Part shown: positions 22,328-54,226 of the stretch, one piece after another
How the letters are laid out: every line of letters begins with the position of its first letter
How positions within the stretch are numbered: the first letter of the stretch is position 1
IMG/VR virus record: IMGVR_UViG_3300049215_000529
Location: 124,001-188,000 of that record
Reading direction: 5' to 3' (one strand)
Length of the DNA stretch: 64,000 nucleotides
The notes under the pieces: model-generated
The model's database searches: none
The model's input: the letters and a program-made list of their open reading frames with translations, nothing else
Told to the model about the DNA's origin: nothing
Program-made: the position numbers and the translations under genes

Positions 22328-22504
22328 TCACAAGTGTTTATTTAGCCAATCAACTGAGAATCCGATTATGGCTATAACCGCAAATATTGGCCAAATTATG
22401 GCTGCCCAAAACATAAACCAAAAATCGTAATAGACACGCAAGAATTTTGTTAAAGCATGTCCCACAAATAATCCAATCAAAAGGTAAAGCAAGAAATAAA
22501 TCAT
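22328..22504 (-). CDS. Small membrane protein (58 aa, not in ORF track)
   Basis: Own translation MIYFLLYLLIGLFVGH...WAAIIWPIFAVIAIIG...; start overlaps NADAR stop. Confidence 0.55.
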   Translation of the reverse strand: MIYFLLYLLIGLFVGHALTKFLRVYYDFWFMFWAAIIWPIFAVIAIIGFSVDWLNKHL

Positions 22505-22947
22505 TACTCTCCCTGTAATTCTTTACGGACCCTCATCAAAGTCTTGCCAAGCATATTTTTGCCTGTACCATCTTTGCCACATCCCCAGTACCAGTCCACG
22601 GGCGAATCTTCAATAAGCTCTTCATTGCCAGTAGCCATTAGTTCGGCGCGCAAGTCTGCATGTTGTAGAAATTTAGCTAGAACACACTGATACATAACAT
22701 CATCTTTGACATGGTTCCAATCACCACGAAGTTTTATTTTCTGTCCAAGATCACGAGCTTCGCGAGGAGTCTTAGCTGCCCAAATCATTTCTTCGTCTTC
22801 TAGGATAACAGTTTTGGCAGCTTGATAAGCCGTTTCAACATTGTCACACCAGCGCCCGCCACCCGGACCAACTATAAACATTCTGGCTTTCTTGAAGTTA
22901 TTCAGAAATCCATATGGTTCATTGGTCTTATAAAATTTAATAGCCAT
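22504..22947 (-). CDS. NADAR-family hydrolase (YbiA-like)
   Basis: ETAYQAAK, KFLQH, LxEDSP.DxYWG, GKNMLGKTLMRVR. Confidence 0.92.
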   Translation of the reverse strand: MAIKFYKTNEPYGFLNNFKKARMFIVGPGGGRWCDNVETAYQAAKTVILEDEEMIWAAKTPREARDLGQKIKLRGDWNHVKDDVMYQCVLAKFLQHADLRAELMATGNEELIEDSPVDWYWGCGKDGTGKNMLGKTLMRVRKELQGE

Positions 22948-24870: not shown

Positions 24871-25752
24871 ATGATCACGGAGCATTATATGTCGCGACCA
24901 AAACGAATTATCACCGAGCAAGAAAAACAAAAAATTGTGGCAGACTACAAAGCTGGCGTATCACTCAAAAAATTGCAAAAAGAAACGAAGTTGCAGCAGA
25001 AGCAACTGAAATTCATTCTTGACCAATTTGATGTTCCAATTCTAACAGCATATGAAACGCAGAGACGAAAAGCGATGTTAGAAGAACGAAACTATTTTGA
25101 CGAGTTAGACGCGCTTCAATGCTATGTGTTAGGGTTGATATTCGGTGATGGATGCGTTCATTACAATCCTAAAAGATACAAATATGCTACAACGATTGTT
25201 AGCAATGATATGGATATCTTAGAAAGTGCCAGACATTTATTAGGGACCAACTTTCCTATTACTAAGAGAAAGAAAGCCAAAGCTTATAACCTTGTCATCA
25301 ACTCCAAACATTTATGCCAAGAACTAATCAATAAGTTTCATCTACAAAGTCCCAAGAGTAGTAAATTGATTTTTCCTAACTTACCACAAGATATGTATCA
25401 GTTCTTCGTTTCGGGACTGTTGAGCACCGATGGGTGTGTCAGAATTGACGACCGCAGAAAAAATCAATCATGTGGTATCGAGTTTTCCTATTCTTCTAAT
25501 TGTTTAGATTTCGTTCAAAAATTGCGTCATTATCTATCTAATACGCTTGATATCGCCGAAGATGGACATATCAAAACGATAAAGCGAAGTAAGAAACGAA
25601 AGAACCCCAACTACTCCTTGCGATACTCGGGAACCAATGCAACTAAGATATTAACTTGGATTTACGAAAATACCTCACCAATAACAAGATGTCAAAGAAA
25701 ATACGATATCTACCGTAATCATTTGGCTTGCGTTTCAAATTCTATAATATAG
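24871..25752 (+). CDS. LAGLIDADG homing endonuclease (two motifs)
   Basis: YVLGLIFGDG and FVSGLLSTDG; convergent overlap with PARP 3' end. Confidence 0.85.
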   Translation: MITEHYMSRPKRIITEQEKQKIVADYKAGVSLKKLQKETKLQQKQLKFILDQFDVPILTAYETQRRKAMLEERNYFDELDALQCYVLGLIFGDGCVHYNPKRYKYATTIVSNDMDILESARHLLGTNFPITKRKKAKAYNLVINSKHLCQELINKFHLQSPKSSKLIFPNLPQDMYQFFVSGLLSTDGCVRIDDRRKNQSCGIEFSYSSNCLDFVQKLRHYLSNTLDIAEDGHIKTIKRSKKRKNPNYSLRYSGTNATKILTWIYENTSPITRCQRKYDIYRNHLACVSNSII

Positions 25753-27203
25753 CGGATACAATGTTGTTGTTCTGGTCCACTTGGCGTATATGTAATCAAT
25801 TCTTCATTATATAGTGACCCGCCTGTTTTAGCCCAAACACTATGTGCTGGGTTAATATTCTTCTTGGTATAGAAGTGAGACTGTTGCGTGATCTTTTGAT
25901 TTCCAAAAGCCACATCTGCTAAAAAGAGATATGCTGTTTTATTTGTTCCTTGAGCCCAGTAGCTACCTCTAACATCACAATAATTCATACTCTTGGTAGA
26001 ATTGGTTGCCCAGTAGATTCCATCCCCAAATGCAGACCCAGCATGGATAACGCCAGAAGGACGAATCAAAAGACCTTTGGTTGTGATACCAATCATGTTT
26101 GCACGACGAGTACCGTGCCATGCAGGAAGAACGTTTGCCTTCTTATAAAGGGCATCCATTTCTTTGGTAATGTCAATACGTTCTTTTACCCACTTAGCAT
26201 ATACTTCAGAAGGAGTGTATTTGCCACATTCCTTAGCAATCTTCTCGGAAGCTTCCATCCAATGCTTGTCTTCATCGTGACGAGCAACACGGAAAACTTT
26301 ATGAGTCTTTAGTTTGCCCAAGCCACCATGATTGCTTGCACGGGTACCATGTAGCATGTTATCAATCCACTTGAACACCGGATCGGAAGGATCAACGTAC
26401 TCCAAATCAGCTTTCAAAGTCGCATACTGCGAATCTACTGCGCTCTTCTTGGAGATAACTGCTTGAACGTTCTTTGCGTCAGCAAAGACGTCGAGAATGT
26501 CGAAAGCTTTATTGAGCTTATCGTCGTCGTCCAAACGTAATACGTCAGCATCAATCTTACGAGGGAGGACGTGAGGAATGTTAGAGTAGTATTGGCTGGT
26601 AAGCTTATTCAACTCCTTGACGTCAGGCTTCTTGACGTGGATTTGCTTACGAGCTTCATCCAGAATTTGTTTGGCGAAATCAATTTGGGTTAACGACAAT
26701 TGACCCAATGGACACTTGTTGGTATCAAGGTTCAATTCAACGAACTCTTGTGTAACGCCGAACCAAGTACGAACTAAGTCCTGCACTTGCGCATGAAGTT
26801 TACTAGCCGATTCGTCTTTCTCAGTGACAGTTGCGCCCAATCGTTTGAGAGCTTCCACAGAAACGGTAGAGTCTACTTTAGATTTACCCATATCAGAGCC
26901 AACGTCAGCCTTAACCAACTTGACTTCAACATAGCCCTTTTTGGTTTTGGACTTGATAATCTTCTCGGCTTCTTTTTCGGCATCAGCCTTATCTTCGCAG
27001 ACACGATACTCTTTGGCGCCAGAAACACCAACACGCCCATACTGCGTATAGATATAGTACTTACCATCATTGGATTCAATCAACTCCAAGTTGTAATACT
27101 TGTTATTGTTATTGATGATGTCAGTAAAATTTAGAGTATAACGCTTAAAAACGTCTTTGATGGAAACTTGAAGTTCATCTTCTCTGATAACAGGCTTAGC
27201 CAT
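25719..27203 (-). CDS. PARP with WGR, regulatory and catalytic domains (start MAKPV)
   Basis: YYNLELI...QYGRVG (WGR-type); CPLGQLS...TSQYYSNIPH (regulatory); WHGTR, FGDGIYWA, YNEELITY (H-Y-E triad). Confidence 0.9.
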   Translation of the reverse strand: MAKPVIREDELQVSIKDVFKRYTLNFTDIINNNNKYYNLELIESNDGKYYIYTQYGRVGVSGAKEYRVCEDKADAEKEAEKIIKSKTKKGYVEVKLVKADVGSDMGKSKVDSTVSVEALKRLGATVTEKDESASKLHAQVQDLVRTWFGVTQEFVELNLDTNKCPLGQLSLTQIDFAKQILDEARKQIHVKKPDVKELNKLTSQYYSNIPHVLPRKIDADVLRLDDDDKLNKAFDILDVFADAKNVQAVISKKSAVDSQYATLKADLEYVDPSDPVFKWIDNMLHGTRASNHGGLGKLKTHKVFRVARHDEDKHWMEASEKIAKECGKYTPSEVYAKWVKERIDITKEMDALYKKANVLPAWHGTRRANMIGITTKGLLIRPSGVIHAGSAFGDGIYWATNSTKSMNYCDVRGSYWAQGTNKTAYLFLADVAFGNQKITQQSHFYTKKNINPAHSVWAKTGGSLYNEELITYTPSGPEQQHCIRYIIEFETQAK

Positions 27204-27567
27204 TTTTAACCTTGGTTCGTTTACGTGGTTGAGGTGCCTCAAGTGGAGGCTCGGGCTCTGACGCCAGTGGCGCCGTGAGCCTCGTCAAAATCAAGTCCAT
27301 TATAAGGCTGATCATGCCGCCAGCAAGACCCCAGCAAATTAATAAATTGAGGCTCCATATTTTTTCGTGCAATAAATAGACGAACCAACCACAATGGAAA
27401 CCAAGGCAGAAATAACAATCCAGTAATTTATAAAAGAATGTACCCACATGAGGGTTTTTAAAGAGTTCATTACGGGCTCTTGCCATCAAACCCCAGGGAC
27501 CGTCTGATTCTTTAATAAAGAAAGCTAGACCAAAAATGGCACCAACAACAATTATGAAATCCAACAT
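27196..27567 (-). CDS. DUF1360-like membrane protein
   Basis: LLDCYFCLGFH flanked by TM segments. Confidence 0.55.
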   Translation of the reverse strand: MLDFIIVVGAIFGLAFFIKESDGPWGLMARARNELFKNPHVGTFFYKLLDCYFCLGFHCGWFVYLLHEKIWSLNLLICWGLAGGMISLIMDLILTRLTAPLASEPEPPLEAPQPRKRTKVKNG

Positions 27568-31165: not shown

Positions 31166-33040
31166 TTACTTGACCAAATCCAAAAACTCTTCTTCCGAAA
31201 TCAAGTTAGTGCCCAGCTTACGTGCAGCTTGCGCCTTTGAACTTGTGCTGCTAGGGTCAGCAATTACCAAGTAGGTAAGTCCTTTGCCCACAGAACTCTT
31301 AACATCAGCACCAGCCTCAGCCGCCATCTTCTCCAAGAGTGGGCGCTTGTTCTTCATAGCGCCAGTGAAACAGACTGACTTGCCAGTCATATTACCAATT
31401 ATTTTGGCTTTGACCTCTACTCCATTGTTAAGTAAGTCCAAAATCAATTTCTGATTGTGTCGCAAACCATCTGCCAAGAACTTTGCCTTGGTCGGACCAA
31501 CACCCGGCACTTGTTCAAAGGCTTCGGCATTGAGTTGCCCAAACTTCTCTAGTGTATCACAGCCCGCGTTCATGATTGCCTTGATTGTGCTTTGACCAAT
31601 CATCGGAATACTAAGGGCTCCAAGCAAAACTTCCAGACCAATCTCTTTGTTAGCCCATAGAATGTCCAAACACTTCTGCGCGGTCTTGTCCCCCAAGCGA
31701 TCTAGCTCAGAGATATCTGTTAGCTTCAAGGTGTATAGGTCAGCAACTGTAGTAACCTTCTTGGCATCCACTAGTTTCTCAACCAAAGAATCGCCCCACT
31801 CAAGTAGATTAAGCTCTTTGACCCAGTTCTTGATACGACCAATGACCTGTGCACGGCAACGTTTAGTGTTGCCACACATCAAATTCTCACCATCCATCTT
31901 GGTCAGACCGCCACATTCAGGGCAGAAGTGAGGCGCCTTGGCAACTTTGCCAGTACCCTTGACCAACTCTTCAATGCGAGGGATAACATCATTGGCTCGG
32001 GCAACCAAAACAGTTGCGCCGATATCCAACTTCAACTCTTCAATGTATGACATATTGTAGATGCTAGCTCGGGTGACTGTCGCGCCCACTAGTTGCACAG
32101 GATCAACCACAGCAACCGGAGTAATACGTCCGCTGTTACCTACTTGCCAAATGATATCACGAATGACTGACTCGCGAGCTTCGTTATCAAACTTGAAAGC
32201 AATAGCTCCCTTGGGTCGCATATCCTTGTCACCAAGTGCAAGTTGCTTCTCCATGTTGTCAACACGAATTACCAAGCCGTCGATATCGTAATCCAACTTG
32301 TCACGCTTGTCATCTTGATACTCTCGCCAATGCTTATTGACCATATCAGCATTCTTCATTACCCACCAGTTGGGGGTATCGAGGTCTTGATTGACGAGCC
32401 ATACGAATTGCAACTGCTCATTACCAAAGTCTACATCGCCTAGCACCTGATAGAACATGATGTTGAGCTTATCAACACCTACGCCATCCAAGCGCTTGCT
32501 GGTACCAGAGGCTGCATTACGAGGATTAGCCTTGTCAGCAAAGTATTGCTTGTGGTTGCTCCTGGTCATGATAATTTCGCCACGCAAGGAACCAGTAAAC
32601 TTGTCTTTCAGATGAGACCGAACACCACCCATCTTAACAACGTTGACTGTAATGTCTTCACCAGTCTCGCCATCACCACGAGTAATGGCTTGTACGAGGC
32701 TACCCTTTTCGTAAATCAGCTCGATGGATAGACCGTCAAGCTTCTCAGTAACGAAAAGTTTGCCATCAGGGTAAGTATCTTCAACCCATTTGGACAGCTC
32801 GGCAGGTGTATTGACTTTATCCAATGAGCCCATGGGGATTTGATGCTTGGCTTTCTTCCATTCAGAAGGGACGATAGGAGCACCAATTGCAGTGACAGCC
32901 TTGCTGGTAGGGTCTAAAGTTCGCAATTCATCTACCCAGGCATCGTATACCTTATCCGAAACAGAGGGTTGATGGTTGTAATAATCAGTGCGGGCTTGGA
33001 AAATCTTGTTTTCTAGCTCTTTGATACGATCCTTCGTCAT
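31166..33040 (-). CDS. ligA: NAD-dependent DNA ligase
   Basis: EKLDG, TRGDG, NPRNAASG, DGLVI, AFKF, Zn finger, HhH, BRCT. Confidence 0.97.
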   Translation of the reverse strand: MTKDRIKELENKIFQARTDYYNHQPSVSDKVYDAWVDELRTLDPTSKAVTAIGAPIVPSEWKKAKHQIPMGSLDKVNTPAELSKWVEDTYPDGKLFVTEKLDGLSIELIYEKGSLVQAITRGDGETGEDITVNVVKMGGVRSHLKDKFTGSLRGEIIMTRSNHKQYFADKANPRNAASGTSKRLDGVGVDKLNIMFYQVLGDVDFGNEQLQFVWLVNQDLDTPNWWVMKNADMVNKHWREYQDDKRDKLDYDIDGLVIRVDNMEKQLALGDKDMRPKGAIAFKFDNEARESVIRDIIWQVGNSGRITPVAVVDPVQLVGATVTRASIYNMSYIEELKLDIGATVLVARANDVIPRIEELVKGTGKVAKAPHFCPECGGLTKMDGENLMCGNTKRCRAQVIGRIKNWVKELNLLEWGDSLVEKLVDAKKVTTVADLYTLKLTDISELDRLGDKTAQKCLDILWANKEIGLEVLLGALSIPMIGQSTIKAIMNAGCDTLEKFGQLNAEAFEQVPGVGPTKAKFLADGLRHNQKLILDLLNNGVEVKAKIIGNMTGKSVCFTGAMKNKRPLLEKMAAEAGADVKSSVGKGLTYLVIADPSSTSSKAQAARKLGTNLISEEEFLDLVK

Positions 33041-41470: not shown

Positions 41471-41476
41471 ACAAAT

Positions 41477-41504: not shown

Positions 41505-41523
41505 GCCCCGCCAATCTGAAAAA

Positions 41524-42720: not shown

Positions 42721-42748
42721 ATCAACATAATGCTACATTATGACGATA

Positions 42749-44239
42749 TTAGATCTTGGCTAGTTTCTTCACCAAATATAGCTCAGATTTACTACGAGTT
42801 ACGGCAACATACCAAAGGTTATCTTCTTCTCCGCCCATTCCGCTTTTTCGATAGGTGCTGGTCAAAATAAAGACACGATCGCGTTCCAAACCTTTGGCTT
42901 TATGAGTCGTAGAAAACATAACTTTAGCAGCATCATCAACATCATTAAACAGTTTCTCGATAGTCTCTTTGAGATCTTTAATCGTCAAAGTTCCTTCGCA
43001 TAGGTTCAATAAACATTCCGCTTTATCGATACATACTGTCGTATCTCTCTTCTCCGACAATAATCTTCTAATTTCTTGCTCTTTCCATTCAACAACATAA
43101 GCAATGAAATCATTAATGGTTTTTGCCTTAGATTTTTTGATGAAGTACAATAGGTTAGCACCAACATCTCGACCCTGAATATTAGCTGGGACACCCGCTT
43201 TGAGCAAAGCCATGCAGTGTTTTACCAATGGGGCATTAGTTCTTGATAGAACGAAATCTCCTGCCTTAACTGATTTTTGCAAATCTTCCACAGGCATTTC
43301 AACAACAAATCCATCTGGAGCATTGTCGTGAGCCTGAATATCGGGAACTATCTCTTGTGCCAGTTTCACCACCTTTTTAGGGCAGCGGTATGTGACTGAA
43401 AGCGGCAACGTCTTAGCTTTCAACTTATTAATGAAATTAGGAATAGCTTCACTGTCGGCTCCGCGAAACTGATAAATGCTTTGAGCAGGGTCACCTACCG
43501 CAATGATTCTACCACCTGGCTTGATTGCCGACATTACCATAGCAATTTGGGCAGCATTCAAATCCTGAGCCTCATCAACGAATACTACATCCCATTTGCC
43601 AACATTGAGACGATACACGAATGGAAACCAAATCATATCATCAAAGTCCACAACTTGCTTTTGAGACTTGCACAATCCTAGTGTTTTGATGACGTACTCA
43701 ATAAATTTGGGTCGTTCTAAATCTAGAGGATCGATATCAAATCGGTCCATCAACTCATCGATTTTGGTTGGAGTGTCAAATAAAAAGCCTTTGCATAAAG
43801 AAACGCATTTGCAAATACTTTGATTAAGCTCCCACAAATCATAGTCGTCACCAATCAAAGTGGCGACCAATGCTCTGCATTTATCGTTCTCTAGGATGAC
43901 ATTGCCAAAATTCTGTTTGATGGCGCGAAAGCCCAAACTGTGAAGGGTTAGAGTGTCTACGTAGGATGGTGCTCGTTGCTTTAGCTCTTCAGCGATGCTT
44001 TTGTTGAAAGCAACCATGAGAGTCTTTTTACCTCTCGGAATGTACTTGAATCCCTCTACGATAGTGGATGTTTTACCAGAACCTGCGCGGGCAATTACCA
44101 CAGTATGATCTGATGCTTTGGCAATATCTTTGAAGATATTCTTCTGAAAGTCAGACCACTCTCTCTTGGGATTGAACTTGACGAGGTGTGAATTATCTGG
44201 TCTTTTGGGTGGAAACTTACTGACCTTTTTTGAGGACAT
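42749..44239 (-). CDS. UvrD/Rep-like SF1 helicase
   Basis: ARAGSGKT, VDEAQD, GDPAQSIY.FRG, TYRC, HKAKGLE, YVAVTR. Confidence 0.92.
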   Translation of the reverse strand: MSSKKVSKFPPKRPDNSHLVKFNPKREWSDFQKNIFKDIAKASDHTVVIARAGSGKTSTIVEGFKYIPRGKKTLMVAFNKSIAEELKQRAPSYVDTLTLHSLGFRAIKQNFGNVILENDKCRALVATLIGDDYDLWELNQSICKCVSLCKGFLFDTPTKIDELMDRFDIDPLDLERPKFIEYVIKTLGLCKSQKQVVDFDDMIWFPFVYRLNVGKWDVVFVDEAQDLNAAQIAMVMSAIKPGGRIIAVGDPAQSIYQFRGADSEAIPNFINKLKAKTLPLSVTYRCPKKVVKLAQEIVPDIQAHDNAPDGFVVEMPVEDLQKSVKAGDFVLSRTNAPLVKHCMALLKAGVPANIQGRDVGANLLYFIKKSKAKTINDFIAYVVEWKEQEIRRLLSEKRDTTVCIDKAECLLNLCEGTLTIKDLKETIEKLFNDVDDAAKVMFSTTHKAKGLERDRVFILTSTYRKSGMGGEEDNLWYVAVTRSKSELYLVKKLAKI

Positions 44240-45053
44240 GAGGAAATCTTCTTTCTAAATCAGAAACCACTTGGACGCCAATTTTCCTGTTTTCTTCCTG
44301 GCGAGCGTGATCATCTTCTCCGCTACTATATCGTGATTTGACCTGAGGAACGCCACTTTTATCTCGCAACAATAAGGCAGCTTCATAAGCTAAAGCTAAC
44401 CAATCTGGCTTCACATCATCCGGTACCTTGCAAATATCGGAATAATCTTTGGAGACAGGATAAAAGCTATAAACACCAGATGTCCAATATTTGGATTGTG
44501 GATCGCTATAATCGTCGTATTCGTTTAGAATCTCTTCATATCCATATTTTTTGAGAAGTTTCTTGACCTCTGCGGCTGCCTCAAATACTTCTTTATTTTC
44601 TTCGCGACGAGCTAAAGAATCAAGATAACTATCTGGGCTTGTATTCATAAGGCTACCATCTAACCAATCATATCCATTACCAATAGTAAAGAACCAATGA
44701 TCAAGATAGGAAACTCTAGTCGGATAAATGTCTGACCAGTATTTGGCGCAGTACTCAAAAGACTCCTCAACTGTGGGCGGACCTTTCTTTTTAAACTCAT
44801 CAATCCAATCAAGACAAGTCTTCATTGCTACGTCACGTGTTTTACCAGGACGTAAACAAATGCCAACGTACGGTCTTGATAATGGAGCATCATGAGTTTT
44901 TCCGTCAATTTTTAAGTCGTAATCTACCAGAATTTTAGCCTGATGAATAGATCCAAATTTCCAAGTATTAACGACAAATCTGTCAATTGTAGTGTACCAT
45001 GTCTCATGATTTTGTTCCCAATCATGACCGAAACAATGTAATTTCTTGGACAT
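44217..45053 (-). CDS. Hypothetical protein
   Basis: 278-aa overlapped ORF. Confidence 0.65.
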   Translation of the reverse strand: MSKKLHCFGHDWEQNHETWYTTIDRFVVNTWKFGSIHQAKILVDYDLKIDGKTHDAPLSRPYVGICLRPGKTRDVAMKTCLDWIDEFKKKGPPTVEESFEYCAKYWSDIYPTRVSYLDHWFFTIGNGYDWLDGSLMNTSPDSYLDSLARREENKEVFEAAAEVKKLLKKYGYEEILNEYDDYSDPQSKYWTSGVYSFYPVSKDYSDICKVPDDVKPDWLALAYEAALLLRDKSGVPQVKSRYSSGEDDHARQEENRKIGVQVVSDLERRFPHVLKKGQ

Positions 45054-45054
45054 G

Positions 45055-45969
45055 TTACCCTCTTGGAAAGAATGAAGAATCAGATCTGTTGAATAATTGA
45101 CTGTCTAAAGCAATAAGCTTATCGAAGTCTTCTACCGCATAGAAAGCAGGATCAATGGCTTTCATGCCATATTTTGCGCCAAATAAGGCGCCGACAATAG
45201 CGGCAGTCGTGTCAGTATCTCCACCAGCCTTGATAGCAGTTACCACTGCATCATAGTAGTTATCAAACTTCAAGAAGCAATATAGTGCTGCTGGAACTGT
45301 TTCTTGAACGTTAGCCTTGGTACCAAGTACCTTGAGAGCTTGCCGTGGGCTAATGTGGTCAGAGCTAATCAAAGCATCTAAACTATAGACAGTATTCTTT
45401 ACCTTACTATCTGGCAAGTGAGCCCAAATCTTTTCTAACAAATTGTCAGAATCATCATTGACAGCGTAATAAGCTGCCACTGCAATAGCAATCGAACCAG
45501 CCTCAGCATCTGGTGATACGTGGGTGATAGCACTATCAACTTTACAGATATCGACTAATGATTTGAGGTCATTGCGGAAATAGACTCCAAATGGTGCGGA
45601 GCGCATAGCGGTACCATTGCCAAGAGAGCCAACAATACCAGATTCACTCCAATGTTTGCCAGAAGTCAAATTCTGAATTGCCATCAAGGTAGTTTTGCCC
45701 CAACCTCTAGCTCGACCAGAAGTCATCCAATCTACGTACCTAGCAGACAAATCGTCTGGATTGAAACCACGATTCTCAATTAGAGATTCGGCAACCATCA
45801 AACTCATTTGAGTATCATCTGAGTATTGTCCTGGTTGTAGCTTATGGTGTTCACTACCCAAGAAACTTTTGCCATCCCATTCCAATAAGGCTGGGTTGTT
45901 TATTAGCTTAGTTTCAAACGGAACGCCAAGTGCATCTGCAACAGCTGTTCCTAATAGTACGTTACTCAT
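45055..45969 (-). CDS. ADP-ribosylglycohydrolase (DraG/ARH family)
   Basis: DALG, YSDDTQM, GNGTAMR, TH, GGDTDT. Confidence 0.93.
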   Translation of the reverse strand: MSNVLLGTAVADALGVPFETKLINNPALLEWDGKSFLGSEHHKLQPGQYSDDTQMSLMVAESLIENRGFNPDDLSARYVDWMTSGRARGWGKTTLMAIQNLTSGKHWSESGIVGSLGNGTAMRSAPFGVYFRNDLKSLVDICKVDSAITHVSPDAEAGSIAIAVAAYYAVNDDSDNLLEKIWAHLPDSKVKNTVYSLDALISSDHISPRQALKVLGTKANVQETVPAALYCFLKFDNYYDAVVTAIKAGGDTDTTAAIVGALFGAKYGMKAIDPAFYAVEDFDKLIALDSQLFNRSDSSFFPRG

Positions 45970-46531
45970 GTATTATTCCTTCTAATAGCATTGCCAACAC
46001 ATATGCATGTCCCACTTTTAGATTTGGATTGTTAACTAGTTCCCAGTAATCAAACGTACCAGGTTCCAAATTATGCGCATCAAAATCTAAAAGAAATACT
46101 TTTTCGTTAGCTTTAGCTAGATCTTTTAATTTTTCAAAAGCAAACGTTCGCTGTACTGCACGAGCATATAGCGGGATGTATATTTTCTTTCTTGCTTCTA
46201 CATAAGAAAATTTTTCACCGTCCCAATAAGAATACAAAGGTTTTGCTTCTTTGCCCATTGGATAACGATCGGCTCTGATTTTGTTCCAACCGCTCTATGC
46301 CCAATCGAAATATCTTTTGCCCACAGTTCCATTATCTTCTAGATAATATTCATAGACCTTGCTATATTGCCAAGCATTTTCCATATTTTGGGAAACATAA
46401 CCATTATACAACTCACATGGTCCACAAAAGAATGGGCTTAAGGACTGGCTCCAATCTTTTGATCGAGAAGTTGCATTGACCACCAAATCACCAGGTTGGG
46501 ACTTGTAGTGGTAGTTGATGACTTTAATCAT
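45962..46531 (-). pseudogene. Divergent NADAR-like protein interrupted by one in-frame TAG (46295-46297)
   Basis: The two track ORFs share a frame: ...RYFDWA*SGWNKIRADRYPMG...; ENAWQYSKV resembles NADAR ETAYQAAK. Confidence 0.6.
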
Positions 46532-46683
46532 AAATATCCTTCCAAAATCATACACAAAGCAAATGCTTGTCCTACTGGGCGGTCAGGATCATTAACCACC
46601 TGATCCCAGGATTTCTCTAGGTAACGATGATTATATCCTTCAAAATCGATCAAGTAACACAAGTATGTTTGTATGTCCAATTG
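46528..46683 (-). pseudogene. 3' remnant of a paralogue of the downstream NADAR-like gene
   Basis: YLIDFEGYN...WDQVVNDPDRPVGQAFALCMILEG aligns with FLLDFDAHN...WELVNNPNLKVGHAYVLAMLLEG; ATGA overlap. Confidence 0.7.
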
Positions 46684-46698
46684 CTAATATCTTGTTTT

Positions 46699-48099
46699 TT
46701 AAGCACCTTCATGACGAACTCTCTTTCTAATTTCTTCGAAATTATCGTCCACCAAAATCTCACCATTCTCATATACCGTCTTCATAACAGTGCGTTTATG
46801 AGAAACCTCATCTTCAAACAAAGGAACGGTTTCATAACCGCCGCGTTCATTGAAGCACAAATCCAAACGTCCTGCTTTGCTTGCCTTGCCCTTGTCAGTC
46901 ACTGGATCTTTGAATACATCCACCGATTTGTCTCCGATGAAAATATGGCTGCACTTCATAGCAAATTTTTCAGTATCACGGTTGAGTTGTTGTAGCAAAG
47001 CGCCACCCATACCAAAAGCAATGTTCGTGGCACTGTAACCATTGTCCATCAAAGTGTCTAGGATCAGCTGGATAGACCTTTCATTGATGCCGTCGCCCTG
47101 AATGATACGGACATTTTTCAAGACCTTATAGCCCCTCTTGTTAATGGTCGTTCCAAACTTTTCTTCCAATAGTTTAACGGTCTTTAGCACTACCGTAGGA
47201 GGATGACCAGAGTCGGGGCGAATGATGACCACTGCACCAGAATCAATCACTTCCTGCTTCAACTGATCACCCCACAAGTGAGAACAAGCATTCCACAAGT
47301 CGTAAGAGTCCGATACACAGGCAACCAAGGCGCCCGGCTTAGCGAATTGCTTTAGCATATTACGATATGCTTCAACTTCATTTTCTTTGCCCCAAGAAGT
47401 AATGGAGCTATGTTCTGCTGCCGGAATGCTGAATCCAGCCATTGGAATATTGTAGTACTCATTGGCACATAACACTCCCACAACCGTATCACTTCCCATA
47501 AAATTGACCAAGTGGGCTGCGCCACCAATCATAGCAGACTCTTGGCTACTAACTCCACGCGAGCCAAAGTCATGAAGCTTAAAGCTGATTTCTGCTTGCG
47601 GATCATCCGAAGATGCTTGCAATGCACGCAAAATAATACCACGAATTGTACGACTGCGGCTAGCTACCGTGATAGGATACCAAACCCTAAGCAACATGGT
47701 TTCAATCCAAGAAACAATCCAAAACACTTTCGGATCAGTAGATTCAATACTGACAAGAATATTATGGGTTGGAACCACAGTTCCTTCTGGTACGGCGCGA
47801 ATACGAATGGGGAGCTTGCCTTTCAAATCTTTGGCAATGTACATCCAGCCGTCATAGTTGAATGGCTCGCCATGTGCCGCAAAGAGTACCTTGGCTTTCT
47901 CAACCTCTTCTACTGTAACTCGATGAGTCAAATATTCCTTCAAGTAGTATTGCAATCCAAAGAAAACAGTTTCACTGTATTCTCCGCCTCGGCTTTCGAT
48001 GTAGGAGAACATACTTGTGGTACCAGGAGGATACTGCAAGTAGTGGGAAACTTTGTAGCTGTCTGTATCAAACAAGTAACTAAAACGATTGGTTTTCAT
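46699..48099 (-). CDS. nadV: Nicotinamide phosphoribosyltransferase
   Basis: DTDSYKVSH, LHDFGSRG, IPAAEHS, VSDSYD, RPDSG, QGDG, GMGG. Confidence 0.95.
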   Translation of the reverse strand: MKTNRFSYLFDTDSYKVSHYLQYPPGTTSMFSYIESRGGEYSETVFFGLQYYLKEYLTHRVTVEEVEKAKVLFAAHGEPFNYDGWMYIAKDLKGKLPIRIRAVPEGTVVPTHNILVSIESTDPKVFWIVSWIETMLLRVWYPITVASRSRTIRGIILRALQASSDDPQAEISFKLHDFGSRGVSSQESAMIGGAAHLVNFMGSDTVVGVLCANEYYNIPMAGFSIPAAEHSSITSWGKENEVEAYRNMLKQFAKPGALVACVSDSYDLWNACSHLWGDQLKQEVIDSGAVVIIRPDSGHPPTVVLKTVKLLEEKFGTTINKRGYKVLKNVRIIQGDGINERSIQLILDTLMDNGYSATNIAFGMGGALLQQLNRDTEKFAMKCSHIFIGDKSVDVFKDPVTDKGKASKAGRLDLCFNERGGYETVPLFEDEVSHKRTVMKTVYENGEILVDDNFEEIRKRVRHEGA

Positions 48100-48119
48100 T
48101 ATACTCTCCGTATGTTTGC

Positions 48120-48144
48120 CATTCGTTCTCTCAGTGAGAACTTG
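48120..48144 (-). promoter_or_regulatory. Conserved dyad/hairpin upstream of nadV
   Basis: CAAGTTCTC-ACTGA-GAGAACGAATG; 23/25 identical to 49188..49212. Confidence 0.65.
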
Positions 48145-48146
48145 GC

Positions 48147-49160
48147 TCAGAACTTGGAAACAAAATACTTTATTATATGGTAGTGGTCCTCGAAAAATTC
48201 ATTCTCCATCGAATGAAATTCGCCCAAAGGTAACCAAAACGCTCTCTCTGCATCGTCAGCTCCTTTTACTTGAGGGAGTGGACCTATCCCCAAATCAATT
48301 AGGTATGCATTAGTAATAGTACGACCGCGAGCAGAACGCAAGGGGTCATCAAATACTTTAAAGTCGGCTATCGATTTTTTTAAATCTGGAGTATTAATTT
48401 TGATACCGGTTTCCTCTTTTAATTCTCTGAGGGCGGCGTCTTGCAATTTCTCTTTTTGATTGACGAAACCACCAGGCAGAGCCAGCAAACCCTTACCAGG
48501 ATTAGACCTTCTAGTCACAATCAATACGTGACCAGACTTCACAACTATTGTATCAACAGTTACAAATATGGGTGGAAATGGGGCTCCTCGCCATTGTTCT
48601 TTGTAATTGTCTATAAAATACTTTTCTTGCTTTATGTTCACGAATTCTTTGGTTTGCTTAAAATTTTCTAAATATTCAGCAACACCATTTGGTACCATTG
48701 TTTTGTAAGATGCGTTATGTGAAAAATATAAATCTCTAACTTGGGTGGCATGAAAATTATATTCTGTCCCGCATTGAATATATTTATATTGGGGAAAAAG
48801 TTTCAAATAATATGATGATTCATCACTTTCGTATCCTATTAGGGATACTTTTTCGGAATAATCCGTGGCTTCACTCACTTTTTGTTGAAGTGTTGATATC
48901 CACAAATTATCATTGTAAGTATAATCCTTCATTGAAATAAATATCACTCTATCTTTTTCTTCCGAAGAGAGACACCGCCTAATCATTTCTTGACGCTCAT
49001 CGCCAGACCACGGATTTCTTATGGTGCGGGGCGAACCACAACTTCCCACCACCACAATCACCTTTTCTGCTATGGTAAGAGCTTTGTCCAAAATAAATTT
49101 GTGAGCTTTCTGAAGGGGAGAAAAACGCCCAATGAATACACAAAAATCAAATTTTTCCAT
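48147..49160 (-). CDS. natV: Bifunctional NMN adenylyltransferase/Nudix ADP-ribose pyrophosphatase (NatV/NadM-Nudix; start MEKFD)
   Basis: GRFSPLQKAH, RNPW, HAT.VR; Nudix PGG.....E....AALRELKEETG, RGRTI, DDA. Confidence 0.92.
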   Translation of the reverse strand: MEKFDFCVFIGRFSPLQKAHKFILDKALTIAEKVIVVVGSCGSPRTIRNPWSGDERQEMIRRCLSSEEKDRVIFISMKDYTYNDNLWISTLQQKVSEATDYSEKVSLIGYESDESSYYLKLFPQYKYIQCGTEYNFHATQVRDLYFSHNASYKTMVPNGVAEYLENFKQTKEFVNIKQEKYFIDNYKEQWRGAPFPPIFVTVDTIVVKSGHVLIVTRRSNPGKGLLALPGGFVNQKEKLQDAALRELKEETGIKINTPDLKKSIADFKVFDDPLRSARGRTITNAYLIDLGIGPLPQVKGADDAERAFWLPLGEFHSMENEFFEDHYHIIKYFVSKF

Positions 49161-49187
49161 ATTAACCTCGCTCTTCTTTAGAGCATG

Positions 49188-49212
49188 CATTCGTCCTCTC
49201 AATGAGAACTTG
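49188..49212 (-). promoter_or_regulatory. Conserved dyad/hairpin upstream of natV
   Basis: CAAGTTCTC-ATTGA-GAGGACGAATG. Confidence 0.65.
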
Positions 49213-49215
49213 CAT

Positions 49216-49980
49216 TCAAACATATATCACGATATTAGTAGCACAATTGGTTTGAAATTTAATAAGTTGGTCTATCCATTTTACCCACGCCGAATATGAC
49301 ATATCTAATTTGGCACGATTACAGACCCAGCAACAAGTTACACAATTCTGTATGGTATAATCGCTATTGCTATCCAACCTATCTATGCCATTATAATTAA
49401 ATATGATTGTGTTATCGGTTCTTTTAATAACTACAGTTTTATTGGGAGATACGCCACAATAATGGCAATCTTTAGATATTAGAGATGAGAATTCATCATA
49501 CGATAATTTCCACTCAATATTTCTGCGCTTAGCATTTCTTTTATATGAATTCAAAATTCTTTTGGTTGCTCTATCATCTTCTGATAATAAACCAATTGTT
49601 GAGTTTTTATTTTGAGCACGCTTGCATCCGCAACTTTTTGATGCACCAGCGATTAAGTTTTTCGAAGGAATATAACAAATTGTTCCACAAATACATTTGC
49701 ATTCCCATATAATTGAGCCATTATTCGATCTTTCATCAGTGATTTTCAATACTGACAAAAATCCAAATCTCATTCCCAAAAGACATGAATAATCTGCAAA
49801 ACATACTCTTTTTCCACAAGAGCGGGAGCGACCTGTTACCAAGTCGGCTGTTCTAATTGATTTTTCAAAACCACAAATACATCTAACTAAGGTGCGAGAT
49901 TTTGGCTTATTTATTTCGATTACTGTCCAAGAACCAAATTGATCATTACAAAAAACATGATATTTAGATTTTAAAGGCAT
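49216..49980 (-). CDS. HNH homing endonuclease with repeated Cys-rich N-terminal modules
   Basis: C.CG...SCG x2; CHYCG...GIDRLDSN..Y...NCVTCC.VCN. Confidence 0.85.
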   Translation of the reverse strand: MPLKSKYHVFCNDQFGSWTVIEINKPKSRTLVRCICGFEKSIRTADLVTGRSRSCGKRVCFADYSCLLGMRFGFLSVLKITDERSNNGSIIWECKCICGTICYIPSKNLIAGASKSCGCKRAQNKNSTIGLLSEDDRATKRILNSYKRNAKRRNIEWKLSYDEFSSLISKDCHYCGVSPNKTVVIKRTDNTIIFNYNGIDRLDSNSDYTIQNCVTCCWVCNRAKLDMSYSAWVKWIDQLIKFQTNCATNIVIYV

Positions 49981-50001
49981 AACTATTCCGATAGAAGTTA
50001 C

Positions 50002-50043
50002 CTCCTCACCGGAGCATAAGTTTTTGTATTTCCTCTCTGGAAA
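50002..50043 (-). promoter_or_regulatory. Tandem pentaloop hairpins (TTTCC-AGAGA-GGAAA; CTCC-GGTGA-GGAG)
   Basis: Intergenic; same arrangement at 50449..50495. Confidence 0.55.
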
Positions 50044-50052
50044 CTTTATAGA

Positions 50053-50082
50053 TTTTGATGAAAGAACTAACCTTCATCAAAA
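50053..50082. repeat. 10-bp inverted repeat
   Basis: TTTTGATGAA...TTCATCAAAA. Confidence 0.8.
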
Positions 50083-50090
50083 TTGACTAA

Positions 50091-50417
50091 TTAATTGGGT
50101 TTTGACTCTGGTGGAGTTTGTGGATTGGAGACATCATCTACATGATTTCCGTCCTCATCCATATGAGCCCCACAATCCTTGCAGGTATGTGGTCTCTTAT
50201 CCCATTCGTCCCAAAACTCATTCTCTGTCCACCCAACAGAAACCAAAAATAATTTCCAGAAAGATATAAACCTGACATCAAACTCATCAGGTGACTCATT
50301 GGGATGGAAAGTATCATGTAGTACATCAAAAAACGCGTCTATGCGCTCAAAATCCATTCTTTCGATGATAGTTAACCCGGTTGATTGTTCGTCCAATACA
50401 ATATTTGCTTTTTTCAT
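50091..50417 (-). CDS. Hypothetical protein
   Basis: GGAG SD; first gene after the 50521 promoter. Confidence 0.65.
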   Translation of the reverse strand: MKKANIVLDEQSTGLTIIERMDFERIDAFFDVLHDTFHPNESPDEFDVRFISFWKLFLVSVGWTENEFWDEWDKRPHTCKDCGAHMDEDGNHVDDVSNPQTPPESKPN

Positions 50418-50448
50418 AGTATACTCCTATAATTTCGGTCTGTTAAAC

Positions 50449-50495
50449 CTCCTCACCGGAGAACTATGTGAAAAATTAAAATCCCTCACTGGGAT
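50449..50495 (-). promoter_or_regulatory. Tandem pentaloop hairpins (ATCCC-AGTGA-GGGAT; CTCC-GGTGA-GGAG)
   Basis: In predicted 5' UTR; ACCTCCTCACCGGAG is identical to 50000..50014. Confidence 0.55.
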
Positions 50496-50520
50496 ATAAA
50501 TAATGATTCACTCAAATTGA

Positions 50521-50548
50521 AATATAACCATGCACTGCGTGATGTCAA
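50521..50548 (-). promoter_or_regulatory. sigma70-like promoter TTGACA-N16-TATATT heading the NAD-salvage run
   Basis: Motif directly after a terminator-like hairpin. Confidence 0.6.
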
Positions 50549-50566
50549 ACCAACCGTTATTTTTAA

Positions 50567-50604
50567 ATAAAACGAGCAGCCTTGGACCATTCCAGACTGC
50601 CCGC
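50567..50604 (-). terminator. Probable intrinsic terminator
   Basis: GCGGGCAGTC...GGCTGCTCGT followed by TTTATTT. Confidence 0.55.
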
Positions 50605-50631
50605 TTCACTTTGAACGTCATGTCGCGTTGC

Positions 50632-51594: not shown

Positions 51595-51677
51595 AATATC
51601 TCCTGTGTTAGTTAACCTTCAACACCGTATATATCATATCTTTCATAGAAATTATCACTTTTTATCATTAATTTCAG

Positions 51678-52970: not shown

Positions 52971-52976
52971 CAGCCA

Positions 52977-53942: not shown

Positions 53943-53947
53943 TTAAC

Positions 53948-54226
53948 TTAATAGATTACAAACCAGTCAATCTCTCTCACACCAAATACTTCCCATTCTA
54001 TATATAAGAAGAATTGGCGATCATGATGGTGATGAATAACTTTTCTGTGTTCATGTTGGTCTTCATCCACATGAATAATTTCCCAATCTAAATGATCGTG
54101 GTGATGTGGATTGCAAGGATGAGGTTCTTTTTCATGTCTGAAACGAACACTTACCTCTCTTGGTCTGCCAGATAGGAGAATTCTTGTTGAATTTTCTCCA
54201 GTTACAGTTAAAGCGCCTGAATGCAT
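53948..54226 (-). CDS. Small beta-rich protein, paralogue of 54239..54472
   Basis: M.SG.L.VTG, PCNP.H.D.L, W.V.GVREI.W shared. Confidence 0.7.
   Translation of the reverse strand: MHSGALTVTGENSTRILLSGRPREVSVRFRHEKEPHPCNPHHHDHLDWEIIHVDEDQHEHRKVIHHHHDRQFFLYIEWEVFGVREIDWFVIY

What the first reader, a model, noticed from the sequence alone, without database searches (positions are those of the whole stretch)
45055..50548. NAD+ reconstitution operon extended with ADP-ribose erasers
A predicted promoter at 50521-48 leads through an orphan, HNH, NatV, NadV, a NADAR-like remnant, a NADAR-like gene and ARH. NadV plus NatV is the established KVP40 salvage route, described as NARP2 against NAD-depleting defences. 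ARH/NADAR could release ADP-ribose, the Nudix domain convert it to ribose-5-P and AMP, and NadV/NatV rebuild NAD+. This links de-ADP-ribosylation to recycling in one unit, matching the PARP locus. No PRPP synthase is in this window.
Basis: partly seen in the sequence, partly recalled or inferred. Interest (0 to 1): 0.72.

Follow-up and report, generated by a model that had tools for sequence, protein, structure and literature searches.

The report
Phage NAD-salvage genes beside ADP-ribose removers
A huge uncultivated phage from moss carries the known NAD+-rebuilding gene pair next to two ADP-ribose-removing enzymes, one of which contains a stop codon that the phage's own mutated serine tRNA can probably read through; the gene set is largely of known kinds and the proposed recycling loop is unproven.

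Summary
The gene content is real. On the minus strand of 45055-50548 lie an orphan, an HNH endonuclease, NatV (NMN adenylyltransferase plus Nudix), NadV (Nampt) and an intact ADP-ribosylglycohydrolase (ARH). NatV and NadV form a NARP2 pair.

The "NADAR-like remnant plus NADAR-like gene" is one 189-codon gene of Pfam DUF6939, split by a single in-frame TAG at 46295-46297. Its fold is NADAR, closest to a DarT1-associated antitoxin NADAR, and the catalytic Glu-x6-Lys motif is kept.

The same genome holds a tRNA-Ser whose anticodon is CUA, where two relatives have CGA in the same slot. This resembles E. coli supD. TAG is nearly purged as a terminator (5 of 241 ORFs).

The order NatV-NadV-DUF6939-ARH-UvrD helicase is conserved in about 12 related huge phages. 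Pairs of these genes, and PARP, recur side by side in unrelated huge phages.

The window also has a WGR-PARP, a canonical NADAR and an NAD-dependent ligase. No PRPP synthase is in the 204-kb record.

I read this as an NAD+/ADP-ribose conflict module, not a closed recycling operon. Co-transcription and recycling are untested, and NADAR/NadV neighbourhoods in phages are already published. It is a new variant of a known kind.

The parts
50521..50548 (-). Sigma-70-like promoter match (TTGACA, 16 nt, TATATT) in the 214-bp gap upstream of the orphan gene
   Evidence: 11 of 12 positions, the best in 40000-54000. The total of promoter-like sites is not above shuffles.
50471..50495 (-). Terminator-like hairpin plus T-run between the promoter-like site and the first ATG. 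It may be the terminator of the upstream 320-aa gene or an attenuator.
50091..50417 (-). Orphan ORF of 108 aa, flanked by an exact 15-bp direct repeat (50447-50461 and 50000-50014)
   Evidence: no family; the repeat occurs only twice in 204 kb. The ORF is absent from relatives other than the identical record.
49216..49980 (-). HNH homing-type endonuclease. Its relatives sit at other positions of the module in related phages.
   Evidence: PHROG 374, 1035, 3118. L010, L011 and L065 carry it at different sites.
48147..49223 (-). NatV (NadM-type): NMN adenylyltransferase fused to an ADP-ribose pyrophosphatase (Nudix). The true start is probably an internal ATG near 49160.
   Evidence: NF003791 410.8 bits against 409; NF003786 403.4 against 397. 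Family alignments start at residues 18-25.
46699..48099 (-). NadV (Nampt), nicotinamide phosphoribosyltransferase
   Evidence: NF006629 639.9 bits against 405. One G>A population variant at 46828.
45962..46531 (-). Single DUF6939 gene (189 codons) with a NADAR fold and catalytic-type residues E51, K58, D149, D151 and H175. It is interrupted by one amber codon.
   Evidence: Model of a 70%-identical homologue, pLDDT 96.3. Fold matches: 8bat Z 9.4, YbiA Z 7.3, 8bau Z 7.2, next best 4.6.
46295..46297 (-). In-frame TAG (codon 79), at a hypervariable position after the invariant Trp-Ala and followed by A
   Evidence: 57 of 60 comparable loci are open. Homologues have Q, K, E, I, T, R, S, A, M or V at this position.
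45055..45969 (-). ADP-ribosylglycohydrolase (ARH) with an intact di-metal site. Its ATG overlaps the end of the DUF6939 gene by 8 nt.
   Evidence: The same coupling, a 4-nt overlap, is seen in the distant 536-kb phage L037.
44217..45053 (-). Clade-specific 278-aa protein of unknown function, packed tightly between ARH and the helicase
   Evidence: 48 homologues, none with a Pfam domain. Model pLDDT 91.9. No clear fold match.
42749..44239 (-). UvrD/Rep-type superfamily 1 helicase, syntenic with the module in relatives
25719..27242 (-). PARP with WGR, PARP regulatory and catalytic domains and an intact H-Y-E triad. This is the candidate ADP-ribose writer of the phage.
22504..22947 (-). Canonical NADAR (PF08719) with an intact ORF, 3 kb from the PARP gene
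   Evidence: (122 bits).
31166..33040 (-). NAD-dependent DNA ligase, a phage-encoded NAD+ consumer

Best explanation
This is an NAD+/ADP-ribose conflict module in the accessory arm of an uncultivated moss-associated jumbo phage of about 430 kb.

NAD+ supply. NatV and NadV form NARP2. NadV makes NMN from nicotinamide and host PRPP. NatV adenylates NMN to NAD+, and its Nudix half destroys free ADP-ribose.

Erasers. Directly downstream sit two ADP-ribose glycohydrolases of unrelated folds. The DUF6939 protein is a divergent NADAR, closest in fold to DarT1-associated antitoxin NADARs. Its most likely role is to strip ADP-ribose from bases of phage DNA, as T4 AdfN does. The ARH most likely removes ADP-ribose from proteins or poly(ADP-ribose). 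A UvrD-type helicase follows in the same gene string.

The genes share a theme (NAD+ and ADP-ribose) rather than forming a closed pathway. Released ADP-ribose can be degraded by NatV, but its return to NAD+ would need the host PRPP synthase.

The amber codon. The NADAR-like gene carries one TAG. Full-length protein can be made only if the phage's own tRNA-Ser(CUA) inserts serine at this variable position.

Shown: gene identities, fold, motifs, synteny, the TAG and the tRNA. Inferred: substrates, anti-defence role, read-through and co-transcription.
For: NARP2:
- Domain architectures and NCBIfam equivalog scores.
- The NatV-then-NadV order is as in many cultured phages.
- No Adps or Prs in the record.
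- Pathway definition in 10.1101/2024.02.11.579819.

NADAR fold of DUF6939:
- The exhaustive structure search puts the three solved NADARs on top (Z 9.4, 7.3, 7.2) and the next hit at 4.6. Foldseek gives the same three.
- 10 of 34 family members weakly hit PF22397, the DarT1-associated NADAR family, over the motif region.
- E51 and K58 are invariant and 7 residues apart, as are E88/K95 of E. coli C7 NADAR, E43/K50 of the Phytophthora NADAR and E36/K43 of AdfN. D149-x-D151 is invariant, like D171-x-E173 of C7 NADAR.
- All phage NADARs tested so far reverse guanine ADP-ribosylation and defeat DarTG1 (PMC11257639).

ARH: a strong Pfam match, intact metal motifs, and nearest solved relatives MJ1187, ARH3, DraG and Tri1.

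Linkage:
- The gene order is conserved in about 12 relatives.
- DUF6939 and ARH are overlapped here and in the distant L037.
- ARH-NadV are adjacent in G029, ARH-PARP in G042 and LR756511, PARP-DUF6939 in G035, and NatV/NadV-DUF6939 in L042.

Read-through:
- The tRNA(CUA) has Ser identity: a long variable arm, G73, and an anticodon stem identical to that of the neighbouring tRNA-Ser.
- It occupies the slot where relatives G016 and G005 have tRNA-Ser(CGA), with a single G>T difference in the anticodon.
- It has the best Rfam tRNA score of its cluster, 55.6 bits.
- TAG ends only 5 of 241 ORFs.
- The TAG sits at a hypervariable site and every invariant residue on both sides is intact.
- It is fixed in two samples.
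Against: - No expression, proteomic or biochemical data exist for any of these genes.
- DUF6939 is below threshold for both Pfam NADAR models and shows no detectable sequence similarity to T4 AdfN. No member has been characterised.
- Only one in-frame TAG was found in 204 kb, so the pairing with the suppressor could be coincidence and the gene a fresh pseudogene.
- The gene is also truncated or broken in some relatives (L058, L059, L065, L066). A canonical NADAR elsewhere in the genome could make it redundant.
- Most distant DUF6939 loci lack NadV and ARH nearby.
- The host and its defences are unknown.
- The phage has its own PARP, so the erasers may serve viral rather than host ADP-ribosylation.
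Confidence: 0.5

Rival explanations
1. One reading: one operon that closes a loop. ARH and NADAR release ADP-ribose from modified targets. The NatV Nudix domain turns it into AMP and ribose-5-phosphate. NadV and NatV rebuild NAD+, so erasure feeds recycling.
For: All the enzymes named are present, intact (apart from the TAG) and tightly spaced. NCBIfam labels close NatV relatives as ADP-ribose pyrophosphatase fusions. The neighbourhood is conserved in the clade.
Against: - Ribose-5-P must be converted to PRPP, and no Prs or Adps is in the 204 kb held.
- NARP2 as defined starts from PRPP and nicotinamide, not from ADP-ribose.
- De-modification yields little ADP-ribose compared with NADase defences (inference).
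- The association is absent in most distant DUF6939 phages, and ARH and NatV are far apart in RaK2-like phages.
- The gene string continues into a helicase, which has no place in a metabolic loop.
Confidence: 0.12
2. A viral writer-eraser circuit. The ARH and the NADAR-fold proteins reverse ADP-ribosylation made by the phage's own WGR-PARP on DNA ends or proteins. NARP2 supplies the NAD+ that PARP and the NAD-dependent ligase consume.
For: - The PARP has an intact H-Y-E triad plus WGR and regulatory domains.
- A canonical NADAR lies 3 kb from it.
- PARP is present in 17 of 49 DUF6939-bearing viral records, against 16 of 50,697 GenBank phage records.
- Among 39 distant records, 4 of 6 with ARH also have PARP, against 4 of 33 without ARH (Fisher p = 0.011).
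- ARH and PARP are adjacent in G042 and LR756511.
- The phage has an NAD-dependent ligase.
- ARH3 reverses PARP products in eukaryotes (established knowledge).
Against: - Among the 15 near-complete records p = 0.09.
- PARP lies 20 kb from this cluster.
- Many phages with ARH or DUF6939 lack PARP.
- The target and role of any phage PARP are unknown.
Confidence: 0.25
3. The DUF6939 gene is a freshly inactivated pseudogene (for example CAG to TAG), and the tRNA(CUA) is unrelated to it. Only NARP2 and ARH are functional here.
For: - Under table 11 the frame is broken.
- Q (CAA or CAG) is the commonest residue at this site in relatives, one transition from TAG.
- The gene is lost or truncated in other phages.
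- A natural early stop is known in RB69 adfN.
- A second, canonical NADAR exists in the genome.
- No other in-frame TAG supports systematic read-through.
Against: - There is no further decay. All invariant residues are intact, identity to intact homologues reaches 70% over the full length, and the TAG is fixed in two samples.
- A cognate, well-formed Ser amber suppressor arose in exactly this lineage.
- TAG terminators are nearly purged.
- The overlap with the ARH start is preserved.
Confidence: 0.3
4. No functional coupling. The genes are neighbours only because accessory genes accumulate in one arm of a huge genome and are inherited together within the clade.
For: - 206 of 241 ORFs lie on one strand, so co-orientation is uninformative.
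- The synteny comes mainly from one clade, with variable small inserts and a wandering HNH gene.
- The surroundings hold unrelated functions: Kelch, PTH2, PLD, Thg1, glycosyltransferases.
Against: Pairwise adjacencies among NadV, NatV, ARH, DUF6939 and PARP recur in unrelated huge phages, although each gene is rare in phages: 0.03-0.13% of records for PARP, ARH and DUF6939. DUF6939 and ARH overlap in two distant lineages. A published survey also finds NADAR next to NadV/NadM.
Confidence: 0.15

Closest known systems
NARP2 (Nampt plus bifunctional Nmnat/Nudix of Vibrio phage KVP40; Lee et al. 2017; Osterman et al., 10.1101/2024.02.11.579819)
   Same: The same two domain architectures, adjacent and in the order NatV then NadV. 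No Adps. NatV-type genes occur in 468 of 50,697 phage records, in line with the roughly 1.1% reported.
   Different: At most 57% (NadV) and 44% (NatV) identical to any cultured-phage protein. Here the pair is embedded upstream of two ADP-ribose glycohydrolases and preceded by an HNH gene. Activity is untested.
Phage orphan NADARs that defeat DarTG1 (T4 AdfN/gp30.3, the Bas32 NADAR and the Bas60 NADAR; PMC11257639) and DarT1-associated antitoxin NADARs (PMC11543638)
   Same: NADAR fold, Glu-x6-Lys motif and an acidic pair near the last strand. A stand-alone phage gene with no adjacent toxin. A natural premature stop also occurs in RB69 adfN.
   Different: A different Pfam family (DUF6939), below threshold for PF08719 and PF22397. 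No detectable similarity to gp30.3. Substrate unknown. The frame carries an amber codon.
NAD+/ADP-ribose gene neighbourhoods of jumbo phages (Iyer, Burroughs, Anantharaman and Aravind 2022, PMC9503650)
   Same: That survey already reports NADAR genes next to NadV/NadM in phages with their own NAD+ synthesis. It also reports ARG domains in about 5% of jumbo phages, PARP-family ARTs in viruses and NadM-type Nudix.
   Different: Here a DUF6939-type NADAR, an ARH, NARP2, a WGR-PARP, a canonical NADAR, a second ARH and an NAD-dependent ligase all occur in one genome. The DUF6939-ARH translational coupling is not described in the passages I read.
supD (serU) of E. coli and psu1+ of T4, which are tRNA-Ser amber suppressors (from my own knowledge); suppressor tRNAs of stop-codon-recoded phages (Borges et al., 10.1101/2021.08.26.457843)
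   Same: A tRNA-Ser whose anticodon reads CUA where relatives have CGA. TAG is depleted as a terminator before or alongside the arrival of a suppressor, as in the published path to recoding.
   Different: A natural rather than laboratory allele. Serine rather than the usual glutamine. Only one sense TAG was found, and it is in an accessory gene, not in the lysis or structural genes. The genome is otherwise standard code.

Membership tests
NARP2 | Nampt homologue with NAMPT_N and NAPRTase domains | tested here: met
   (E 8e-31 and 1.9e-61). NF006629 scores 639.9 bits against a cut-off of 405.
NARP2 | Nmnat homologue (KVP40 NatV type, NMNAT fused to Nudix) in the same genome | tested here: met
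   It is adjacent, 47 nt from NadV. The Nudix box is intact and the protein is above two equivalog cut-offs.
NARP2 | No Adps (Prs-like) partner, which would indicate NARP1 | tested here: inconclusive
   PF13793 and PF14572 are absent from the 204-kb record, but only about 47% of the genome is held.
NARP2 | Rebuilds NAD+ and overcomes NAD+-depleting defences | not testable with these tools
   Needs infection or enzyme assays.
NADAR superfamily | NADAR alpha+beta fold | tested here: met
   Model of the 70%-identical homologue P0006, pLDDT 96.3. Matches: 8bat Z 9.4 over 153 residues, 2b3w Z 7.3, 8bau Z 7.2, next best 4.6. Foldseek gives the same top three.
NADAR superfamily | Catalytic Glu and Lys seven residues apart, plus an acidic or His residue in the last strand | tested here: inconclusive
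   E51 and K58 are invariant, as are D149, D151 and H175. Equivalence to E88, K95 and D171 of C7 NADAR is inferred from spacing and the weak PF22397 alignment over residues 22-61. It was not taken from a residue-level superposition.
NADAR superfamily | Match to a Pfam NADAR model above threshold | tested here: not met
   The best PF22397 hit among 34 members has E 0.0087, below the gathering score, and PF08719 is not hit. The family is PF22075, DUF6939.
NADAR superfamily | Uninterrupted reading frame | tested here: not met
   One TAG at codon 79 under table 11.
AdfN (T4 gp30.3-type anti-DarTG1 NADAR) | Sequence relationship to gp30.3 | tested here: not met
   hhalign of the family profile against T4 gp30.3 gives probability 1.4%.
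AdfN (T4 gp30.3-type anti-DarTG1 NADAR) | Removes ADP-ribose from guanine in DNA and rescues the phage from DarTG1 | not testable with these tools
   Needs biochemical and plaque assays.
ADP-ribosylglycohydrolase (ARH/DraG, PF03747) | Family match and binuclear metal-site motifs | tested here: met
   244.8 bits against a cut-off of 26.2. DALG, SDDT and GGDTDT motifs present. PDB relatives include 1t5j, 2cwc, ARH3, DraG and Tri1.
ADP-ribosylglycohydrolase (ARH/DraG, PF03747) | Assignment to DraG or Tri1 (arginine-specific equivalogs) | tested here: not met
   104 bits against a cut-off of 337, and 99 against 490. Substrate class remains open.
Stop-codon-recoded phages (TAG reassigned) | Suppressor tRNA with anticodon CUA | tested here: met
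   It lies outside the window, at genome 199329-199420, minus strand.
Stop-codon-recoded phages (TAG reassigned) | Many genes with in-frame TAG, and low coding density under the standard code | tested here: not met
   ORFs of at least 100 aa cover 89% of the record under table 11. Only one convincing in-frame TAG was found.
Operon (single transcription unit 50548 to 45055) | Co-transcription from one promoter without internal terminators | not testable with these tools
   Gaps and overlaps between the genes are 110, -8, 47, 167 and -8 nt. Terminator-like hits are weak and not above shuffles. No RNA reads were available.

The most novel reading that the evidence does not exclude
The phage runs a self-sufficient ADP-ribosylation circuit. 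Its parts are a WGR-PARP writer, two NADAR-fold and two ARH erasers, NARP2 as NAD+ supply and a Nudix domain as ADP-ribose sink. One eraser can be translated in full only through a phage-born tRNA-Ser(CUA). This would be the first step of a TAG-to-serine reassignment caught in nature: TAG terminators are almost purged, one anticodon base has changed, and one sense TAG exists. The suppressor would then act as a translational gate on an anti-defence or regulatory enzyme.
Probability: 0.15. Interest if true: 0.7.

Novelty: new variant of a known kind. Interest (0 to 1): 0.5.

Why it matters
NAD+ depletion and ADP-ribosylation are two major arms of bacterial immunity. Phage answers to each, NARP1/2 and AdfN-type NADARs, were found only recently and separately.

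This locus places both answers, plus an ARH, in one conserved gene string of a large clade of about 430-490-kb phages. The same genome also encodes a PARP.

Three things follow:
- It names a candidate function for an uncharacterised family. DUF6939 has more than 1,200 homologues.
- It suggests that ARH and this NADAR type work together.
- It offers a natural test case for how a suppressor tRNA and the first sense-TAG codon arise together.

If the erasers instead serve the viral PARP, this would be a virus-encoded writer-eraser system.

Tried and rejected
- Megablast of the region against GenBank phages found nothing. The virus is known only from metagenomes.
- A family profile of DUF6939 against PDB sequences found nothing useful. 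Fold comparison was needed.
- hhalign against T4 gp30.3 was not significant, so I do not file the gene under AdfN.
- Genome-wide TAG reassignment is rejected. Table 11 already gives 89% coverage, and TAG-as-sense adds no more than the other stops do.
- The other stop-bridged frames are non-coding frames or adjacent genes.
- I read the broken frame only with X at the stop. No residue was put there in any tool.
- Separate translation of the C-terminal half from ATG 46258 is unlikely. That Met is an invariant family residue and no ribosome-binding site precedes it.
- The 278-aa neighbour has a confident model but no match above background in the PDB or AlphaFold clusters. A weak WGR-like hit (probability 0.51) is not reliable.
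- Macro domain: only a sub-threshold hit, outside the window.
- Counts of promoter-like and terminator-like sites are not above shuffles.
- Reads were laid on DNA contigs, so no RNA evidence on co-transcription was obtained.
- Searches (structure tool not ready; too many handles) failed and were repeated correctly.
- No complex prediction was run, because I do not claim that these proteins bind each other.

Full report
**Where the window comes from.** The window is bases 124001-188000 of a 204,190-bp IMG/VR virus record that CheckV rates 47% complete. Homologues of its genes lie on contigs of 430-490 kb, so the virus is a jumbo phage of roughly that size. Megablast finds no GenBank phage. Four moss-metagenome runs, which amount to two data sets each filed twice, hold the region. 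Of 241 non-overlapping ORFs of at least 100 aa, 206 are on the minus strand, so co-orientation carries no information about operons.

**Checking the observation.** The listed genes exist on the minus strand:
- Orphan, 50091-50417, no family.
- HNH endonuclease, 49216-49980, PHROG 374.
- NatV, 48147-49223, with NMNAT and Nudix domains.
- NadV, 46699-48099, with NAMPT_N and NAPRTase domains.
- ARH, 45055-45969, PF03747 at 2e-72.

NatV exceeds two NCBIfam equivalog cut-offs for the bifunctional NMNAT/Nudix enzyme, and NadV exceeds NF006629. The NatV Nudix box is complete. The ARH has the DALG, SDDT and GGDTDT motifs of the binuclear metal site.

The promoter-like site at 50548-50521 is the best match in 14 kb, at 11 of 12 positions. 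Such sites are no more frequent than in shuffles. A hairpin with a T-run (50495-50471) lies between the site and the first ATG.

Gaps and overlaps along the string are 110, -8, 47, 167 and -8 nt. After the ARH they are 1 and -23 nt into a 278-aa gene and a UvrD-type helicase. The string therefore does not end at 45055.

**The 'remnant' is half of one gene.** The two small ORFs at 46295-46555 and 45962-46258 hit the N- and C-terminal parts of Pfam DUF6939 and are in the same frame. A six-frame family search scores them as one match with one TAG inside. Read with X at the stop, the 189-residue product has more than 1,200 full-length homologues of 185-200 aa, up to 70% identical. All invariant residues on both sides of the stop are intact.

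The TAG (46295-46297, codon 79) follows an invariant Trp-Ala. At this position 48 other loci show Q, K, E, I, T, R, S, A, M or V. The TAG is present in contigs of both moss data sets at about 11x with no variant, and in a second, 100% identical IMG/VR record. It is not an assembly error.

**What DUF6939 is.** No paper in the library mentions the family. An AlphaFold model of a 70%-identical homologue with a 34-sequence alignment is confident (pLDDT 96.3). Foldseek ranks E. coli YbiA, Geobacter lovleyi NADAR and Phytophthora NADAR first. An exhaustive alignment against 48,161 PDB chains gives these same three at Z 9.4, 7.3 and 7.2, with the next hit at 4.6. Ten of 34 members weakly match PF22397, the DarT1-associated NADAR antitoxin family, over residues about 22-61.

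The family keeps an invariant Glu and Lys seven residues apart (E51 and K58). That is the spacing of the catalytic pair in C7 NADAR (E88/K95), Phytophthora NADAR (E43/K50) and T4 AdfN (E36/K43). It also keeps an invariant D149-x-D151 and H175 near the C-terminus.

The family fails both Pfam NADAR thresholds and shows no detectable similarity to T4 gp30.3. E51 and K58 lie before the TAG and the acidic pair after it, so only a read-through product has a complete site.

**An amber suppressor in the same genome.** ARAGORN finds 32 tRNAs in the record, including one with anticodon CUA at 199329-199420 on the minus strand, outside the window.
- It is 92 nt long with a long variable arm, a GGAA acceptor start and G73. 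Its anticodon stem is identical to that of the neighbouring tRNA-Ser(ACU), so it is a serine tRNA.
- It lies between tRNA-Ser(GCU) and tRNA-Trp. In the relatives G016 and G005 that slot holds tRNA-Ser(CGA), and the anticodon loops differ by one base, CGA against CUA. E. coli supD is this same change (my own knowledge).
- It has the highest Rfam tRNA score of its cluster.

TAG terminates only 5 of 241 ORFs (2.1%), and 3 of 206 on the main strand. The figures are 5.0% in close relatives and 15.8% in distant DUF6939-bearing phages.

The genome is otherwise standard code. A coding-potential filter leaves the DUF6939 TAG as the only convincing sense TAG in 204 kb. This fits the early steps of the published route to recoding: stop depletion, then a suppressor, then the first recoded codons. 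A coincidental fresh nonsense mutation is not excluded.

**Is the neighbourhood meaningful?** A related contig shows NatV, NadV, three small genes, DUF6939, two small genes, ARH, a 300-aa gene and a UvrD helicase in the same order. Of 63 viral loci encoding DUF6939, about 12 close relatives share this order with variable inserts, tandem DUF6939 duplicates and a wandering HNH gene. In about 45 more distant loci NadV, NatV and ARH are mostly not within 10 kb.

There are independent recurrences:
- ARH lies next to DUF6939 in L022, L024 and L037. In L037 the two genes overlap by 4 nt, as they do by 8 nt here.
- NatV and NadV lie near DUF6939 in L042.
- ARH lies next to NadV in G029, next to PARP in G042 and in LR756511, and PARP lies 1.6 kb from DUF6939 in G035.

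These genes are individually rare in GenBank phages: PARP in 16, ARH in 34 and DUF6939 in 66 of 50,697 records, against 2,017 for NadV. PARP is nevertheless in 17 of 49 DUF6939-bearing viral records. Genome size and shared ancestry confound these counts. In RaK2-like phages ARH and NatV are about 200 kb apart. The link is thematic and recurrent, not obligatory.

**Wider context in the window.** The phage encodes several other NAD+/ADP-ribose genes:
- A PARP with WGR and regulatory domains and an intact H-Y-E triad, 25719-27242.
- A canonical NADAR 3 kb from it, 22504-22947.
- An NAD-dependent DNA ligase, 31166-33040.
- A second ARH, 42% identical, inside the tRNA-Ser cluster outside the window.

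No Prs or Adps is in the record.

**How it most likely works.** NARP2 is defined as Nampt plus Nmnat using PRPP and nicotinamide. It counters Thoeris, DSR, SIR2-HerA and SEFIR by restoring NAD+. This pair fits that definition.

All phage NADARs tested so far remove ADP-ribose from guanine in DNA and defeat DarTG1. The closest fold here is a DarT1-type antitoxin. A NADAR next to a helicase also has a parallel in the E. coli ybiA-dinG operon. I therefore favour DNA base de-ADP-ribosylation for DUF6939 and macromolecular ADP-ribose removal for the ARH, which a published survey also proposes for phage ARG domains.

The recycling loop is chemically possible but needs host Prs and would handle little material, so I rate it low. 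A writer-eraser role with the viral PARP is the main rival.

**Comparison with what is known.** NARP2, phage NADARs, ARG domains in jumbo phages, viral PARPs and NADAR-NadV/NadM neighbourhoods are all published. Three things are new here:
- The NADAR fold of DUF6939.
- Its recurrent coupling to an ARH.
- The amber codon paired with a supD-like phage tRNA.

I call it a new variant of a known kind and score interest at 0.5.

Noticed in passing
Outside the window: genome 199329-199420 (-), which is L067:530-621 (-): A natural supD-like amber suppressor. It is a tRNA-Ser with anticodon CUA in the slot where relatives G016 and G005 carry tRNA-Ser(CGA). Its Rfam tRNA score is the best of its cluster. 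The identical record G049 has it too.
   Followed up: yes
Whole 204-kb record: TAG is almost unused as a terminator: 5 of 241 ORFs, one of them a LAGLIDADG homing endonuclease on the minority strand. Close relatives use it at 5% and distant DUF6939 phages at 15.8%.
   Followed up: yes
window 25719-27242 (-) and 24871-25752 (+): A PARP with WGR, regulatory and catalytic domains and an intact H-Y-E triad. A LAGLIDADG endonuclease gene on the opposite strand overlaps its 3' end by 34 nt.
   Followed up: partly
window 22504-22947 (-): A canonical NADAR (PF08719, 122 bits) 3 kb from the PARP. The phage therefore has two NADAR-fold proteins.
   Followed up: partly
Outside the window: genome 199667-200656 (-), which is L067:868-1857: A second ARH paralogue (329 aa, 42% identical to the one in the window) sits between tRNA-Ser genes, next to the suppressor tRNA. 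Close relatives also have two ARHs.
   Followed up: partly
window 50447-50461 and 50000-50014 (-): An exact 15-bp direct repeat (CTCCGGTGAGGAGGT), unique to these two places in 204 kb. It lies about 30 nt upstream of the orphan and HNH start codons and flanks the orphan gene. It may be an insertion scar or a local regulatory element.
   Followed up: partly
L006, L007, L010, L012, L023; L065, L066; L058, L059: In relatives the DUF6939 gene is tandemly duplicated (five loci). In L065 it is cut after about 48 codons and followed directly by an HNH gene, and L066 likewise matches only the first ~50 codons. In L058 and L059 it is interrupted by a stop. The gene turns over quickly.
   Followed up: partly
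window 31166-33040, 54499-55116, 38612-39496, 41018-41470, 35321-36424, 27571-28224: An NAD-dependent DNA ligase plus a set of RNA and tRNA repair or maintenance genes: RNA ligase, Thg1, PTH2, a PheRS-like protein and a poly(A)-polymerase/CCA-adding head domain. The window also holds 19 tRNA genes, several duplicated.
   Followed up: no
window 44217-45053 (-): A 278-aa protein found only in this phage clade (48 homologues). The model is confident (pLDDT 91.9) but no fold match stands above background. It is wedged between the ARH and the helicase.
   Followed up: yes
window 46828: A G>A variant in the 3' part of NadV splits the contigs of one moss data set, at about half the depth. The population is polymorphic there but not at the TAG.
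   Followed up: no
window 37515-38615, 41524-42720, 39806-40495: DUF444, a Kelch-repeat protein and a PLD-family protein lie downstream in the same gene string. Their functions in a phage are unclear.
   Followed up: no
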